Origin: Eutreptiella sp. 'Long Island Sound 2002'
Taxonomy: Eukaryota; Protista; Euglenida
Reading direction: 5' to 3'
Assembly: GCA_964036045.1 (NCBI GenBank)
Contig: OZ038378.1
Span: 5,952,001 to 6,016,000 of the forward strand
DNA: 64,000 nt
Part shown: piece after piece, positions 9,058 through 49,437 of the stretch
Layout: the number at the start of each line of letters is the position of its first letter
How positions within the stretch are numbered: the stretch's first letter is position 1
Position numbers and translations under genes: made by a program
Notes under the pieces: generated by a model
What the model saw: the letters and a program-made list of their open reading frames with translations, nothing else
Databases searched by the model: none
What the model was told of the DNA's origin: nothing

Positions 9058-9290
9058 TCAGCCACCCCAAGCCGGCCTGAAAATAGTCGCTCGCAGCGGG
9101 CCCCTTAGGGCAGCCGATAGGGATGACCTGGCTCCCCCACCGTTCGTCCTGGTACAAGAAAACGTCATGAACGGCTTGTCGTGCCTGTGTATCCTGCCCC
9201 TTCCCCACTCCTTTGGTAGCACAGCGGGTGCCTTGTCTCCTCCTTCCTCTAGGACGAGCTGCAGAATCCTGCCCACCAAACGCCGACAGG
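9058..9290 (-). CDS. Tentative terminal exon ([18 protein letters not shown]...stop)
   Basis: aatcag acceptor; its phase matches the phase-1 GTAAGT donor at 10364; no recognisable motif. Confidence 0.35.
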
Positions 9291-48200: not shown

Positions 48201-49437
48201 AAATTGCTTGATATACTGCATTGTCACACATGTGATGCACCTCACCAAACGCTAACATAGCTGCCTCATTCATGACACCGAGAAAGAGGAGAGACCGCAA
48301 CCATTTTTTCTGAAGCCGGCAATGCCCAATGGAATCCCACTACGGCAGCACCCTCTTTAGTGCTTTGGCACCTGCTGTTCTTCCAGTCCATAAACACCGA
48401 CCGGCACAACACCCGTGCCAAAGACGCGAAATGACTGTTTCCACCAATAATGGCCTACATGAGTGAACGGGCCGGTGCACAACCTGCTATGCAGTTTTTC
48501 ACCCTGGGCAGCTCAAAAACCAAAGTTTTCGAAACTTACTTTTTTGATACCGTGATCACCTAAAATGACCATCCAAGGTATGTAAAGCATGTTTTAGGCC
48601 GTATTTATTTCGTTTTCACCTTACTTGGGTATCGGGCGTGCGGGGGAGGGTCTCCCAAGGGATTGGTACACAACCTGCCTATGCAGTTTTTCACCCTGGG
48701 CAGCTCAAAAATTGAAGTTTCCGAAACCTATTTTTTGATACTGTGATCACCTAGAATGACCATCCAAGCATGTTTTAGCCCGTATTTATGTAGTTTTTAC
48801 CCTATTTTGGGTGTGTGTTGCTTGGGGTAGATTCTCTGCAAGGTGGACTTGCCGAAGGCAATAAAATTTATGGAAAATCAAAGAGAGTGCGACAATAACA
48901 GAATGACGATCGTATTTGTGTACCTGGGGGCAGCGGGGGAGAGAGGGGGAGTGTTCCAGGGTGTTTGAAATGTTTGAACTGCATAAAGCCGCAAATGTGT
49001 GTGGGGCTGGGCAGTGGAGTACAAGTGCAGGGGTGGGCAGGATTGAAGGCAACGGCAGAGAGCTCTTCCTTTGCGAATCTGAGCATCCCCGGGCCCTGTC
49101 CATACGCACACCGATTGTCCCTGAGTTCCGTTGGTGCGACAGCGCTTGGCATGCGGGCCATCAACGTCAGCCCCAGAGAGGGAACGCTTGCGGTACAGCG
49201 GCTGCGCCTGAAGCGGGTTGGTGTCTTGATGCTGTAGCAGGACATCAACGGATGTGGCGTGGAACAGAGGTCGGAGGCAGTGGCTCGGGGCAAAGGGCAC
49301 AAAGTGGAGCACGCATCGGACGCATCAGGGCAGCCGGGAGGCGCCGTGCGCCCACAATAAAAGGGGCCCGAAAGGAAAAGGGTGCCGGAGCGCACTGCGG
49401 GCGAATCTTCAGACCACCAGCGACTGTTGACCGCCAT
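9058..49437 (-). CDS. Multi-exon gene: RRM x3 - KH-like x6 - RRM - BMT5/DUF2431-like SAM methyltransferase (~1,170 aa)
   Basis: Exons 49112-49231, 45613-45800, 36109-36369, 34445-34832, 33596-33725, 32392-32643, 31552-31829, 27977-28276, 25122-25249, 22759-22912, 17042-17215, 16621-16712, 15870-15930, 15564-15741, 14603-14820, 13603-13772, 10365-10537, 9058-9290 all have GT/AG ends and chain in phase (3498 nt). Domain motifs continue across junctions. First exon (49396-49437?) and last exon are tentative. Confidence 0.75.
9307..9511. mobile_element. 205-bp hAT-like MITE
   Basis: 12-bp TIR (T/C)AGGGCTTCTTT at 9307-9318 and 9500-9511; flanks ATCCCGAT / ATCCCGAG (7 of 8 bp TSD match). Confidence 0.7.
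10365..10537 (-). CDS. DUF2431 C-terminal exon ([18 protein letters not shown]...RAFTFCF)
   Basis: cgcag acceptor and GTAAGT donor; matches the family pattern V-P-F-x4-[YW]-x-G-Y-x-H...T-F-x-F. Confidence 0.8.
13603..13772 (-). CDS. DUF2431 exon ([32 protein letters not shown])
   Basis: tttcag acceptor, GT donor; N..LL..FF..A..LL...GEIHVTLK is the family signature. Confidence 0.9.
14603..14820 (-). CDS. DUF2431 exon (FEVDAT...YIIFNFPH)
   Basis: ttccctcag acceptor, GTAATG donor; VDAT and IIFNFPH motifs. Confidence 0.9.
15564..15741 (-). CDS. DUF2431 N-terminal exon with SAM-binding motif I ([12 protein letters not shown])
   Basis: catctgcag acceptor; VGEGN.SF motif; phase 1 into the next exon. 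Confidence 0.9.
15870..16712 (-). CDS. Two linker exons (16621-16712 and 15870-15930)
   Basis: Poly(Y) acceptor at 16713; donors GTATCA and GTAAAG; phases 0-2-0 bridge RRM4 to the methyltransferase. Confidence 0.55.
17042..17215 (-). CDS. RRM-like exon 4 ([20 protein letters not shown]...CKVKFE)
   Basis: tttctctttgcag acceptor, GTATGG donor; RNP2-like V-x-G-[IL] pattern. Confidence 0.8.
17420..17580. repeat. (GTGGT/GTGTA)n microsatellite
   Basis: Direct reading; a related tract at ~20515-20577. Confidence 0.85.
17885..20510. repeat. Intronic 47-bp palindromic minisatellite with higher-order repeats
   Basis: Unit CTGCAATGCACTGCCTCACTGCCTGGGGGCAGTGGGCAGTGCAACTC; marker variant TGTTAAACAC at 18151, 18855, 19465 and 20215 (spacings 704, 610, 750). 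Confidence 0.95.
21738..22080. repeat. (ACTAC)n/(ACTGC)n pentanucleotide microsatellite
   Basis: Direct reading. Confidence 0.95.
22759..22912 (-). CDS. KH-like exon ([21 protein letters not shown])
   Basis: actcag acceptor in phase with the 25122 donor; GTGTGT donor; V-x-G-T-x3-V signature. Confidence 0.7.
23846..23912 (+). pseudogene. tRNA-derived sequence (probable SINE head, not a functional tRNA)
   Basis: A-box-like GGTCGAGTGGTAATG and perfect B-box/T-arm TTGGGTTCGATTCCCGA; acceptor and anticodon stems do not pair. Confidence 0.6.
25122..25249 (-). CDS. KH-like exon ([23 protein letters not shown])
   Basis: Joins the 27977 donor in phase 0 to complete [35 protein letters not shown]; GTATCT donor. 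Confidence 0.8.
27977..28276 (-). CDS. KH-like exon ([13 protein letters not shown]...[14 protein letters not shown])
   Basis: gtcacag acceptor, GT donor, exactly 100 codons; continues the helix [13 protein letters not shown] from the previous exon. Confidence 0.85.
30027..30781. mobile_element. 755-bp non-autonomous hAT-type element
   Basis: Perfect 23-bp TIR CAGACATGTGGTTACAGCCGTGC; perfect 8-bp TSD TGCCACAC (30019-30026, 30782-30789); subterminal GTTGCGCACGG boxes. Confidence 0.9.
31552..31829 (-). CDS. KH-like exon ([35 protein letters not shown])
   Basis: KH-like beta-beta-alpha pattern; phase 1 in, phase 0 out; GTTTGT donor. Confidence 0.8.
32392..32643 (-). CDS. KH-like exon ([14 protein letters not shown]...[14 protein letters not shown])
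   Basis: actcag acceptor and GT donor, both phase 1; two [IV]-x-G-T-x3-V motifs. Confidence 0.8.
32971..33158. repeat. (CT)n / (CTCTCC)n microsatellite
   Basis: Direct reading. Confidence 0.95.
33596..33725 (-). CDS. KH-like linking exon ([25 protein letters not shown])
   Basis: Strong ttttctcttgtacag acceptor; phase 0 in and phase 1 out fit both neighbours. Confidence 0.6.
34445..34832 (-). CDS. RRM-like exon (end of RRM2 plus RRM3)
   Basis: [15 protein letters not shown]...[19 protein letters not shown]; paralogous to exons at 36.2 kb and 45.7 kb. Confidence 0.85.
36109..36369 (-). CDS. RRM-like exon (end of RRM1 plus RRM2)
   Basis: ctttgcag acceptor; [15 protein letters not shown]...[19 protein letters not shown]...[14 protein letters not shown]. 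Confidence 0.85.
37089..38207. repeat. Interleaved inverted repeats A-B ... A'-B'
   Basis: A 37089-37350 is the inverse of 37795-38031; B 37351-37512 is the inverse of 38036-38207; two TTAGGG units (37077-37088) abut A. Confidence 0.85.
38215..38960. repeat. ~162-bp tandem satellite with phased A/T tracts (~4.6 copies)
   Basis: GATCC/GATAC anchor at 38271, 38433, 38594, 38754 and 38920. Confidence 0.9.
39422..41951 (-). CDS. Reverse transcriptase ORF, 3'-truncated
   Basis: [57 protein letters not shown]; the frame then runs into unrelated sequence and stops at 39288. RT core ~39425-40030. Confidence 0.9.
40459..41943 (-). CDS. Tyrosine recombinase
   Basis: N-terminal KST..Y, box I LRVGE, box II HAWRRGG, GRW, VHY (R-H-R-W-Y set complete), then a low-complexity tail; same frame as gag after one TGA. 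Confidence 0.92.
   Translation of the reverse strand, partial: WGSCPIRPIPPEPRGALVVLGPSDFRDGEDVVWRLVWAAWRRIWKEDEITSVDALQASSWAKSTMGTYCTHFRKMALWVGYTPTSELEQAACRYIFQLWGLGYSGSSLKVAVSAFRALEDMGWLPAFVSRRVWRCAKWAPTEPALRPYAGLDDLRNFALACTERPQWTVYGMAVLAFTCLLRVGEAAPLRRGGSRCRGLAFRTVKVAPRIVRRRLGKYAQEWLGWLDATGATSAVVGAQFCPQGPAFMQSVMAAALGGSDNPHARWHAWRRGGSAALRWLGLPIKWLAWWGRWLSETVAVHYADAPDDFVVTTEAVLPWPPDNHAGEFVWHAVSLRDVFPKELLELCAPDADEPPQWGGDGDGSAGGRGGSCPGESASPAAAGAAGREDRAGARDPGAPPALTAVEGSSGRGRRPRGDGGGEVIDVDADPPPASAAGSSIRRLRIAARRTGEVASVLGKRKAAGPARIVGAAARTAISRRVGAGSVGAGAPSDR
41944..42993 (-). CDS. Gag-like protein with coiled coil and C-terminal CX2CX9HX4C knuckle
   Basis: Uninterrupted ~349 aa ORF ending [19 protein letters not shown]; first ORF of the element. 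Confidence 0.75.
   Translation of the reverse strand: MSVDDFAVFAKGTICSQFIDSVPMLEIARAASQVEMKLSVLLERRSEWEASFVAKYGIELGEVGLVKMIASYCVMAQCDLDVASLGFVKVEVPPQQPQTVSPELLELKQLVQGQALVMEGLRKQLEAVSAKAEAESKRKMAKVPPLCKAEIVKVRELDSKPQWVFASLLALSTLLWRREVPQHEYVSKYKDKEKFTDAILDELAPVVDADSADTEVWQLESMDDDELTRLRSFVQAVWTFTVTSLSAYRGKKGLDPGPVGEGSDAAEDASDVPVLSAGCTGAAEEEVVGRRLQAMKGKFRVEGGRRLYTAKPGAEPMDVTNAPVTACRACKNAGRGVKRHWFHECPGFD
44718..45010. repeat. ~82-bp tandem repeat (~3.5 copies)
   Basis: CTAGTCTGATG...GGTCCCAGGGTCC...CTGCAGCCC units at 44718, 44799, 44882 and 44965. Confidence 0.9.
45613..45800 (-). CDS. RRM-like exon 1 ([22 protein letters not shown]...VWYAEFPS)
   Basis: Long poly(Y)-cag acceptor; phase-2 donor GTCTGC joins 36369 to give WAKILSGTQYG. 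Confidence 0.85.
48478..48790. repeat. ~190-bp direct duplication
   Basis: CACAACCTGC(C)TATGCAGTTTTTCACCCTGGGCAGCTCAAAAA...GTGATCACCTA at ~48478 and ~48668. Confidence 0.85.
49112..49231 (-). CDS. Upstream exon with bipartite NLS-like [19 protein letters not shown]
   Basis: ctacag acceptor and GT donor, 40 codons, phase 0/0, compatible with the RRM1 exon. Confidence 0.55.

What the first reader, a model, noticed from the sequence alone, without database searches (positions are those of the whole stretch)
9058..49437. Apparently unusual architecture: RRM x3 + KH x6 + RRM fused to a BMT5/DUF2431-like RNA methyltransferase
Seen: 18 GT-AG exons chain in frame over 40 kb. The C-terminal domain keeps all family motifs ([29 protein letters not shown]). 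Established: DUF2431 is the domain of yeast Bmt5 (25S rRNA m3U methyltransferase) and of FDXACB1; tandem RRM plus degenerate KH arrays feeding an enzyme is the layout of PARP14, PARP10 and DTX3L. Inference: an RNA-sensing scaffold with a methyltransferase effector, possibly acting on non-rRNA (mRNA, transposon or viral) substrates. I know of no described example, but could not search.
Basis: partly seen in the sequence, partly recalled or inferred. Interest (0 to 1): 0.85.

Follow-up and report, generated by a model that had tools for sequence, protein, structure and literature searches.

The report
Euglenid RRM/KH array fused to BMT5-like methyltransferase
A real, intron-rich gene of the marine euglenid Eutreptiella encodes four RRM-fold and six KH-fold domains joined to a BMT5-type RNA methyltransferase; I found no published description of this layout, it recurs in Euglena gracilis and in two paralogues of the same genome, and its RNA target is unknown.

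Summary
The core observation holds. On the minus strand, 13 GT-AG exons (45806-10354) give an open 948-codon frame. It aligns in one BLASTP segment (38% identity, 554 bits) with a Euglena gracilis transcript-derived protein, EG_transcript_1854.

The layout is RRM x3, KH-like x6, RRM, then a BMT5-like (PF10354) methyltransferase with every quoted motif. The fusion is genuine for three reasons:
- Exon 10 carries both the last strand of RRM4 and the VGEGNGSF motif.
- The Euglena transcript is continuous across that junction.
- Two intronless paralogues in the same genome assembly encode KH + RRM-like + BMT5 in single ORFs.

The RRM fold is supported by a repeat profile that hits nucleolin (E 1e-11). 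The KH fold is supported by a model with pLDDT 83 whose top 50 Foldseek matches are all KH domains.

Not confirmed:
- The count of 18 exons.
- The start at 49437.
- The end at 9058.

"RNA-sensing" remains inference. The RRMs are acidic and lack RNP motifs, and the KH units lack GXXG. The resemblance to PARP14 is one of layout only.

This is a new euglenid variant of a known enzyme family. The target RNA is unknown, and in E. gracilis the yeast Bmt5 site is pseudouridine.

The parts
45613..45806 (-). Exon 1 of the supported model (aa 1-64): RRM1 strands b1-b3 and helices. ATG at 45806; the CAG|G acceptor at 45800 may instead join an unidentified upstream exon.
   Evidence: tblastn to P0009 99-152, 52% identity; junction 45613|GT..AG|36369 gives AEWAKIL-SGTQYG, parallel to P0009 VEWAKTL-SGTEVQ
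36109..36369 (-). Exon 2 (aa 65-151): last strand of RRM1, linker, and RRM2 (b1-a2)
   Evidence: Pfam RRM_1 E 0.0027 on 35823-36494; tblastn to P0009 153-239; junction
34426..34832 (-). Exon 3 (aa 152-287): last strand of RRM2, RRM3, and the first half of KH-like 1
   Evidence: tblastn to P0009 234-381; junctions; A3 HMM domain 175-245
32392..32643 (-). Exon 4 (aa 288-371): second half of KH-like 1 and KH-like 2. The donor at 32392 is the least certain splice site.
   Evidence: Weak Pfam KH_DEAH11_2nd E 0.025; A2 HMM domain 314-371; junctions
31552..31778 (-). Exon 5 (aa 372-447): linker and KH-like 3. The acceptor at 31778 is chosen among several in-frame options.
   Evidence: tblastn to P0009 482-541, 33% identity. 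The P0009 counterpart folds as b-a-a-b-b-a (pLDDT 83), and all top 50 Foldseek hits are KH domains.
27977..28276 (-). Exon 6 (aa 448-547): end of KH-like 3, KH-like 4, and the first half of KH-like 5
   Evidence: Pfam KH_1 E 0.015-0.05; tblastn to P0009 540-638; model of KH4 has pLDDT 62 with KH-enriched Foldseek hits
25122..25249 (-). Exon 7 (aa 548-589): second half of KH-like 5 and the start of KH-like 6
   Evidence: tblastn to P0009 640-692, 43% identity; junctions
22759..22912 (-). Exon 8 (aa 590-641): KH-like 6
   Evidence: tblastn to P0009 679-741; A2 HMM domain 589-635; junctions
17042..17215 (-). Exon 9 (aa 642-699): RRM4 b1-a2
   Evidence: Pfam RRM_3 E 0.01; tblastn to P0009 725-791, 41% identity
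15564..15741 (-). Exon 10 (aa 700-758): last strand of RRM4 (GKPVTISP), linker, and the start of the BMT5-like domain ([13 protein letters not shown]-binding motif I). This is the fusion exon.
   Evidence: 66% identity to P0009 over the exon; Pfam BMT5-like profile positions 1-17; junctions 17042->15741 and 15564->14820
14603..14820 (-). Exon 11 (aa 759-831): BMT5-like core (ITASNLD, VDAT, IIFNFPH)
   Evidence: Pfam PF10354 E 4.8e-10, 40.4 bits. Both flanking intron positions and phases are identical in an E. gracilis genomic contig, L012.
13603..13772 (-). Exon 12 (aa 832-887): BMT5-like (GEIHVTLKD)
   Evidence: Pfam PF10354 E 1.5e-12, 48.6 bits; 55% identity to P0009 920-977
10354..10537 (-). 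Exon 13 (aa 888-948 plus stop): end of BMT5-like (WDGYVH...FTFCF) and a 20-residue tail. An alternative GTAAGT donor lies at 10365.
   Evidence: tblastn to paralogue P0002 183-220; alignment with family members; donor context

Best explanation
The locus is a single protein-coding gene of a Eutreptiella (Euglenida) genome. It encodes a protein of at least 948 residues with this domain order: three divergent RRM-fold domains, six KH type-I-fold domains that lack the GXXG loop, a fourth RRM, and a C-terminal BMT5-like class I (Rossmann-fold) SAM-dependent methyltransferase with all family motifs intact.

It belongs to a euglenid family of BMT5-like enzymes that acquired N-terminal RNA-binding-type modules. 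The same architecture occurs in an E. gracilis transcript. Two intronless paralogues in the same genome have KH_1 + KH-like + RRM-like + BMT5.

Most likely mechanism (inferred): the methyltransferase domain methylates an RNA base, by family precedent N3 of uridine. The RRM/KH array docks the enzyme on a particular RNA or ribonucleoprotein, partly through protein contacts, and so sets a substrate specificity different from the stand-alone BMT5 enzyme.

Shown here: the gene structure, the domain folds, motif conservation, and conservation of the fusion. Inferred: catalytic activity, RNA as substrate, and the targeting role of the array.
For: Gene and fusion:
- 13 GT-AG exons give one open frame, colinear with P0009 over 878 residues.
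- Exon 10 encodes both the last RRM4 strand and VGEGNGSF.
- P0009 is a transcript-derived protein of E. gracilis.
- The introns flanking exon 11 are at the same position and phase in E. gracilis genomic DNA, and the transcript joins across them.
- Paralogues P0010 and P0013, from the same ENA assembly ERZ25074135 as the window, are uninterrupted ORFs. The window model aligns with them from inside RRM4 through BMT5, residues 663/669 to 873/913, at 37-39% identity.

Enzyme domain:
- Pfam PF10354 matches above cut-off on two exons.
- The motifs GEGNxSF, ATxxD, VDAT, FNFPH, GEIHVT and GYxH line up with plant and euglenid family members.
- Yeast Bmt5 is a SAM-binding, nucleolar m3U2634 methyltransferase that is largely inactivated (m3U strongly reduced) by a glycine mutation in the SAM motif (PMC3950682).

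RRM: a profile of the 8 repeats hits nucleolin RBDs at E 1.1e-11, and nearly all other hits are RRM proteins.

KH: the AlphaFold model of the P0009 unit homologous to window KH3 has pLDDT 83 and b-a-a-b-b-a topology. All top 50 Foldseek PDB hits are KH domains, with TM up to 0.84. Pfam KH_1 gives weak hits on separate units.

Organism: the RER1 gene in the window is 100% identical to SL-trans-spliced transcripts of JGI 3300017366. The same assembly and the same JGI sample encode an exact MMETSP0809 / EukProt Eutreptiella protein.
Against: - No transcript of this gene from Eutreptiella itself was found. No protein containing exon 11 exists in the 15-billion-protein collection beyond relatives at 50% identity or less, and the metagenome scan was uninformative. 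Expression and splicing in this organism therefore rest on homology.
- The RRMs are acidic (pI 4.2-4.5, 2-8 basic residues each) and lack RNP1/RNP2. The KH units lack GXXG. Direct RNA binding by the array is doubtful.
- The E. gracilis homologue has FHFPQ in place of FNFPH, so activity may not be conserved across the family.
- In E. gracilis LSU rRNA the Bmt5-equivalent site is pseudouridine, not m3U, so the precedent substrate probably does not apply.
- The 5' and 3' ends of the gene are undefined.
Confidence: 0.62

Rival explanations
1. It is the canonical Bmt5 orthologue: a nucleolar enzyme that makes m3U at the LSU rRNA position equivalent to yeast U2634. The RRM/KH array simply helps docking on pre-60S particles of the unusually fragmented, hypermodified euglenid ribosome.
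For: - Family membership holds.
- Yeast Bmt5 is nucleolar and acts on 25S rRNA.
- The E. gracilis ribosome has 22 base modifications, of which 12 have so far been reported only in Euglena, and enzymes are needed for them.
- KH proteins such as Pno1/Dim2 work on pre-ribosomes and appear among the fold hits.
Against: - In E. gracilis the U2634-equivalent is pseudouridine 3206. The one m3U listed nearby (3540) aligns with human m3U4530, which is made by the unrelated SPOUT1 enzyme in flies and humans.
- The same genome has a stand-alone 303-residue BMT5 protein (P0002) that fits the canonical role better.
Confidence: 0.2
2. The RRM/KH array is a protein-protein interaction scaffold, as reported for the KH-like domains of PARP14/PARP9/DTX3L. 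The methyltransferase domain is either brought to a protein complex or is catalytically degenerate in part of the family.
For: - The RRMs are acidic and lack RNP motifs, and the KH units lack GXXG.
- PMC11080071 reports protein-protein roles for KH-like domains.
- P0009 has FHFPQ instead of FNFPH.
Against: - The window copy keeps every family motif.
- KH1, KH3, KH4 and KH6 are basic, with pI 8.1-9.5.
- Paralogue P0010 has a canonical KH_1 with GKKG.
Confidence: 0.13
3. These are two separate genes, an RRM/KH gene and a BMT5 gene lying head to tail on the same strand, and they chain in frame only by chance.
For: - All genes in the window lie on the minus strand.
- Euglenid mRNAs are SL trans-spliced, so any AG could be a 5' end.
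- An in-frame Met lies upstream of exon 10 in the unspliced frame.
Against: - RRM4 is split between exons 9 and 10, and exon 10 also starts the BMT5 domain.
- The E. gracilis transcript is continuous across the junction.
- The intronless paralogues carry the same RRM-BMT5 junction.
Confidence: 0.03
4. It is a PARP14-like innate-immune RNA sensor that methylates viral or transposon RNA.
For: Only the resemblance in layout to PARP14/DTX3L.
Against: - No detectable sequence or fold relation to PARP14 or DTX3L.
- No expression, induction or evolutionary-rate data.
- The family is old enough to be shared by Eutreptiales and Euglenales at 38% identity.
Confidence: 0.02

Closest known systems
Yeast Bmt5 (YIL096C) and the Pfam family BMT5-like (PF10354, formerly DUF2431)
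   Same: The C-terminal roughly 190 residues match the family profile. They keep the SAM-binding GxGxxSF motif, VDAT, FNFPH, GEIHVT and GYxH.
   Different: Bmt5 carries none of these RNA-binding-type modules (from my own knowledge of the yeast protein; not checked here). This protein has about 720 residues of RRM and KH folds in front. In E. gracilis the Bmt5 target position carries pseudouridine rather than m3U.
E. gracilis EG_transcript_1854 (EukProt EP00667 P001854; P0009)
   Same: Same domain order along the whole length, 38% identity, and identical intron positions around exon 11. It is a likely orthologue or close family member.
   Different: It has a 98-residue N-terminal extension with no match in the window. 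Its 3' end is truncated. Motif IV reads FHFPQ, not FNFPH. It is annotated only with PF10354.
Paralogues P0010 and P0013 of the same assembly (ERZ25074135)
   Same: Both share the RRM-like + linker + BMT5 module, at 37-39% identity from inside RRM4 onward. P0010 has a canonical KH_1.
   Different: Both are intronless. They have two KH units instead of six and no triple RRM. Their N-terminal region is different and conserved between them, with only a weak CID hit (E 0.025) that the PDB profile search did not confirm.
PARP14 / PARP9-DTX3L RRM + KH-like arrays
   Same: The layout is alike: tandem RRMs and degenerate KH-like repeats preceding an enzymatic domain (PMC11080071).
   Different: The effector differs (ADP-ribosyltransferase or E3 ligase versus methyltransferase). 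No detectable homology was found. The lineage is metazoan. The KH-like domains there are reported to mediate protein-protein contacts.
RNA methyltransferases with appended RNA-binding domains (TRMT2A with an RRM; FDXACB1 with a BMT5-like plus FDX-ACB domain; Dim1 working with the KH protein Pno1/Dim2)
   Same: The general principle is shared: a Rossmann-fold RNA methyltransferase is guided by an RRM, KH or other RNA-binding module, in cis or in trans. The TRMT2A RRM and Dim2p appear among the weak hits.
   Different: None of them has a ten-domain RRM/KH array. The FDXACB1 and Dim1-Pno1 comparisons come from my own knowledge and were not tested here.

Membership tests
BMT5-like methyltransferase (Pfam PF10354) | Profile match above the curated cut-off (24.7 bits) | tested here: met
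   40.4 bits (exon 11 piece) and 48.6 bits (exon 12 piece), covering profile positions 23-88 and 94-154. Exon 10 covers positions 1-17.
BMT5-like methyltransferase (Pfam PF10354) | Conserved SAM-binding and catalytic-pocket motifs (GxGxxSF, VDAT, FNFPH, GEIHVT, GYxH) | tested here: met
   All are present in frame and aligned with plant and euglenid members. A glycine of the SAM motif is needed for Bmt5 activity.
BMT5-like methyltransferase (Pfam PF10354) | m3U formation on LSU rRNA (yeast U2634) and nucleolar location | not testable with these tools
   The only indirect evidence is that the equivalent E. gracilis position is pseudouridine 3206.
RRM (Pfam PF00076 clan) | Profile match to the RRM family | tested here: inconclusive
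   Single units fall below the Pfam cut-offs: RRM_1 18.0 bits against 20.7, RRM_3 16.3 against 22.9. The P0009 units give no hit at all.
RRM (Pfam PF00076 clan) | Relationship to solved RRM domains | tested here: met
   A profile of 8 repeats hits nucleolin RBDs at E 1.1e-11 and 9.6e-7, and LARP4 at 0.002. The rest of the list is almost entirely RRM proteins.
RRM (Pfam PF00076 clan) | RNP1 / RNP2 consensus for RNA contact | tested here: not met
   b1 reads V(A/V)(L/V)SG(F/L)P and b3 reads W(Y/H)(A/V)(E/D)F. There is no [RK]G[FY] start, and pI is 4.2-4.5.
KH type I (Pfam PF00013) | Profile match | tested here: inconclusive
   KH_1 gives E 0.0014-0.05, below cut-off, on 2 of 10 units. KH_DEAH11_2nd gives E 0.025. 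hhalign against the P0010 KH_1 is not significant.
KH type I (Pfam PF00013) | b-a-a-b-b-a fold | tested here: met
   The model of P0009 481-550, which is 33% identical to window KH3, has pLDDT 82.9. All 50 best PDB matches are KH domains, with probability 0.97-1.00 (mostly 1.00) and best E 1.5e-3. The window KH4 model is weaker at pLDDT 62 but is also enriched for KH hits.
KH type I (Pfam PF00013) | GXXG loop between helices 1 and 2 | tested here: not met
   No window unit has GXXG. The loops read [18 protein letters not shown] and so on.
PARP14 / DTX3L-type RRM-KH scaffold | Detectable homology of the array | tested here: inconclusive
   No PARP14 or DTX3L chain appeared in the sequence-profile or Foldseek hits. 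However, their N-terminal arrays may not be present in the PDB.

The most novel reading that the evidence does not exclude
Euglenids have redeployed the BMT5 rRNA m3U methyltransferase fold onto new substrates by fusing it to RRM/KH arrays (and, in the paralogues, perhaps to a CID-like RNA polymerase II-binding region). On this reading the family writes a base methylation on non-rRNA targets such as Pol II transcripts or SL RNA, or on lineage-specific rRNA sites. That would be a new class of eukaryotic RNA-modification writer.
Probability: 0.2. Interest if true: 0.8.

Novelty: new variant of a known kind. Interest (0 to 1): 0.5.

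Why it matters
BMT5-like enzymes are known from one characterised activity: yeast 25S rRNA m3U2634. The many relatives of this family in other eukaryotes remain poorly characterised, to my knowledge.

A conserved euglenid family joins this catalytic domain to ten RRM/KH-fold domains. The lineage concerned has the most heavily base-modified eukaryotic ribosome reported so far, and it lacks m3U at the Bmt5 site. The family therefore gives a concrete candidate for orphan RNA modifications.

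It is also testable. Knock-down of the E. gracilis homologue followed by nucleoside mass spectrometry would show what the family does. The finding further illustrates that RRM+KH arrays in front of an enzyme arose independently of the metazoan PARP14/DTX3L proteins.

Tried and rejected
- Full-length alignment of P0009 with the 13 exon pieces (A1). MAFFT stacked the repeats on each other, so it was not used.
- The search for homologous proteins with P0009 and with P0010 region 490-900. These returned only the queries themselves and P0013, so the phyletic spread could not be widened.
- Metagenome scan with exon 10. No Eutreptiella transcript of the gene was recovered.
- PDB sequence search for a BMT5-family structure: none found.
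- KH-unit profile against PDB sequences. Nothing was significant; Dim2p and FUBP1 KH domains appeared at E 0.3-2.
- hhalign of the KH profile against the P0010 KH_1: not significant.
- CID domain in the paralogues. Pfam gave only E 0.025, and the PDB profile search did not confirm it.
- Candidate 5' exons (ATG 49312-49112; a SAP-like peptide at 51482-51393, with in-frame joins to 49207 or 45800). The joins are possible, but similarity to the P0009 N-terminus is no better than shuffled sequence.
- Exons downstream of the 10365 donor. None of the open frames looks coding.
- Rfam scan of the window: no family above threshold.
- My first impression of a dispersed proline/glycine-rich repeat was not borne out at the DNA level.

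Full report
**Where the gene is and what supports it**

The feature lies on the minus strand.

Pfam places three exon-sized pieces in BMT5-like (PF10354). Two of them are above the family's own cut-off: 40.4 and 48.6 bits against 24.7. Upstream pieces gave only weak RRM_1, RRM_3 and KH_1 hits.

I searched 1.84 billion representative proteins with the exon-11 piece and got 24 hits. One of them, P0009, is a 977-residue protein derived from a Euglena gracilis transcript: EukProt EP00667, EG_transcript_1854.

tblastn of P0009 against the window gave colinear segments from 45776 down to 13602. Using these as a guide, I chose GT-AG junctions that reproduce the Euglena sequence across each join. The result is 13 exons:
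- 45806-45613
- 36369-36109
- 34832-34426
- 32643-32392
- 31778-31552
- 28276-27977
- 25249-25122
- 22912-22759
- 17215-17042
- 15741-15564
- 14820-14603
- 13772-13603
- 10537-10354

Together they give 2,847 nt, in frame, encoding 948 residues plus a stop. All donors are GT and all acceptors are CAG. The product aligns with P0009 in one BLASTP segment: residues 11-888 against 99-977, 38% identity, 554 bits. Chance chaining cannot produce that.

**Is the fusion real?**

Four lines of evidence say yes.
1. Exon 10 encodes both the last strand of the fourth RRM (EGKPVTISP) and the first methyltransferase motif ([10 protein letters not shown]). No gene boundary can fall between the array and the enzyme.
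2. The E. gracilis sequence comes from a transcript and runs straight through this junction.
3. An E. gracilis genomic contig (L012) carries the exon homologous to window exon 11. It has an acceptor and a GT donor at exactly the same codon positions and phases, and the transcript joins across them.
4. The window comes from ENA assembly ERZ25074135, contig ctg10872. The same assembly holds two uninterrupted ORFs, P0010 (1,007 aa) and P0013 (1,109 aa). The window model aligns with them from inside RRM4 through the BMT5 domain at 37-39% identity. P0010 also has a canonical Pfam KH_1 domain.

An intronless ORF cannot be an exon-chaining artefact, so RRM/KH-BMT5 fusions are genuine products in this organism.

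**Domain folds**

*RRM.* Repeat HMMs built from the window and P0009 units find four RRM-type and six KH-type units in each protein. The RRM profile hits nucleolin RNA-binding domains in the PDB at E 1.1e-11 and 9.6e-7. Nearly every other listed chain is also an RRM protein.

*KH.* Sequence evidence for the KH units is weak:
- Pfam KH_1 gives E 0.0014-0.05.
- Dim2p and FUBP1 appear in the PDB profile search only at E 0.3-2.
- The hhalign comparison is not significant.

Structure prediction settles it. P0009 481-550 is 33% identical to window KH-like 3. It folds with mean pLDDT 82.9 into b-a-a-b-b-a, and all 50 best Foldseek matches in the PDB are KH domains. These include the KH domains of PNPase, vigilin, hnRNP K, FUBP1, KSRP, Nova, MEX-3C and PCBP, with probability about 1 and TM up to 0.84. 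The shorter window unit KH4 gave a low-confidence model (pLDDT 62), but its best matches are again mostly KH domains.

**Limits on "RNA-sensing"**

The four RRMs are strongly acidic, with pI 4.2-4.5 and two to eight basic residues each. They lack the RNP1/RNP2 consensus. None of the six KH units has a GXXG loop, although KH1, KH3, KH4 and KH6 are basic.

KH-like arrays in PARP14/PARP9/DTX3L are reported to mediate protein-protein contacts (PMC11080071). No PARP14 or DTX3L relative appeared in any search here. The array may thus dock on a ribonucleoprotein through protein as much as through RNA. The PARP14 comparison is one of layout, not ancestry.

**Enzyme and likely substrate**

The window domain keeps the positions shared by plant and euglenid family members. 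Yeast Bmt5 is a nucleolar, SAM-binding enzyme that makes m3U2634, and a glycine-to-arginine change in the SAM motif strongly reduces m3U formation (PMC3950682). No BMT5-family structure exists in the PDB by sequence.

The supplementary modification table of the E. gracilis ribosome paper is informative. It pairs yeast m3U2634 with pseudouridine 3206, and lists m3U3540 opposite human m3U4530 (PMC7672448). The human site is made by the unrelated SPOUT1 enzyme (PMC11641110). [quoted passage not shown]

The Eutreptiella assembly also encodes a stand-alone 303-residue BMT5 protein, P0002, and at least one more split locus, P0004.

Taken together, the fused family more probably has a non-canonical target than the yeast one. 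What that target is cannot be told from sequence. The E. gracilis copy reads FHFPQ where the window copy reads FNFPH, so activity may differ within the family.

**Organism**

The RER1 gene at 62673-63203 has euglenid best hits. Two JGI 3300017366 contigs match the window over 63204-61032: L005 at 100% identity and L004 at 99.5%. Each begins with TTTTTTTTC, nine bases not encoded in the genome. From my own knowledge of the Euglena spliced leader, I take this to be its 3' end.

A second RER1 protein is labelled MMETSP0809 / EukProt Eutreptiella braarudii / taxid 73025 (Eutreptiella gymnastica). It is encoded exactly in the same assembly and the same JGI sample. The window is therefore a Eutreptiella genome. 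All recognisable genes in it lie on the minus strand.

**What is not confirmed**

The homologue supports nothing upstream of 45806 or downstream of 10354.

At the 5' end, the ATG at 45806 sits inside a strong acceptor context (pyrimidine tract, then ATGCAG|G). This suggests that 45800 is a cis acceptor and that one or more coding exons lie upstream. In-frame candidates exist:
- 49312-49112.
- A SAP-like peptide at 51482-51393, which can join 49207 or 45800.

Neither candidate resembles the P0009 N-terminus better than shuffled sequence does.

At the 3' end, a perfect G|GTAAGT lies 9 nt before the stop. None of the downstream open frames looks coding, including the one ending at 9058. The figure of 18 exons and the span 9058-49437 are therefore unverified.

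I also found no Eutreptiella transcript or protein containing this gene in the public collections that I could search.

**Verdict**

This is a real, conserved, euglenid-specific architecture of a known enzyme family. It is absent from the literature I could search. It is present, but unannotated, in public sequence data. It is a new variant of a known kind and of moderate interest. Its value lies in offering a testable candidate writer for orphan RNA base methylations in euglenids.

Noticed in passing
window 39252-43420 (minus strand, inside intron 1); related 8028-8361: A retroelement of about 4.2 kb lies in the first intron, on the gene's strand. It has a gag-like ORF (41944-42999), an 887-aa ORF with Pfam RVT_1 (39288-41951, E 9e-11) and an overlapping 478-aa ORF (40459-41895). 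Its two ends (43171-43420 and 39252-39359) occur joined head to tail at 8028-8361 in the opposite orientation, at 79% and 96% identity. That looks like a terminal-only derivative or a junction copy.
   Followed up: partly
window 17894-20507, 21739-22079, 32973-33158, 38258-38973: The introns carry large simple repeats: a 47-bp minisatellite of about 55 copies, (TACAC)68, (TC)n, and a 161-163-bp tandem repeat. An inverted repeat pair of about 430 bp lies at 37089-37517 / 38209-37795.
   Followed up: no
window 61032-63204 (minus strand); loci L004, L005: The RER1 gene is intronless, with CDS at 62673-63203. JGI transcripts match the genome at 99.5-100% identity from 63204 down to 61032. They start with a non-genomic TTTTTTTTC, consistent with spliced-leader addition at 63204. 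The 5' UTR is 16 nt and the 3' UTR is about 1.6 kb or more.
   Followed up: yes
window 51363-58356: Neighbouring coding pieces are all on the minus strand: a WW-domain protein (54779-55399, Pfam WW E 3e-12), a 416-aa ORF (57109-58356) and an ORF ending in a SAP-like peptide (51363-52085). The gene orientation is unidirectional across the window.
   Followed up: partly
window 10354-10371: A perfect donor consensus, G|GTAAGT, sits 9 nt upstream of the stop codon of the last supported exon. It could mark an alternative 3' exon or be coincidence.
   Followed up: partly
L001 3001-6024 (P0010) and L002 3001-6330 (P0013), same assembly: Two intronless paralogues share 49% identity. They have a conserved N-terminal region of about 300 residues (weak Pfam CID, E 0.025, unconfirmed), a coiled-coil or low-complexity stretch, a KH_1 domain (P0010), a second KH-like unit, an RRM-like unit and BMT5. 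The contrast is striking: 12 introns in the window gene against none in these two.
   Followed up: partly
P0001 / P0003 (Cuscuta proteins found): The parasitic plant Cuscuta encodes proteins with seven and five tandem BMT5-like domains. Plants also fuse the domain to heavy-metal-associated domains, as in HIPP41. The BMT5-like domain is evidently prone to duplication and fusion.
   Followed up: no
L007 6001-9164 and L008 6001-6912, same assembly: There are further BMT5-like loci in the Eutreptiella assembly. One is a split gene (P0004 plus a second BMT5-like ORF about 1.9 kb downstream). The other is a stand-alone 303-aa protein (P0002) on a contig with lower coverage, 14x against 31-39x elsewhere. 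It might be a haplotig or belong to another organism.
   Followed up: no
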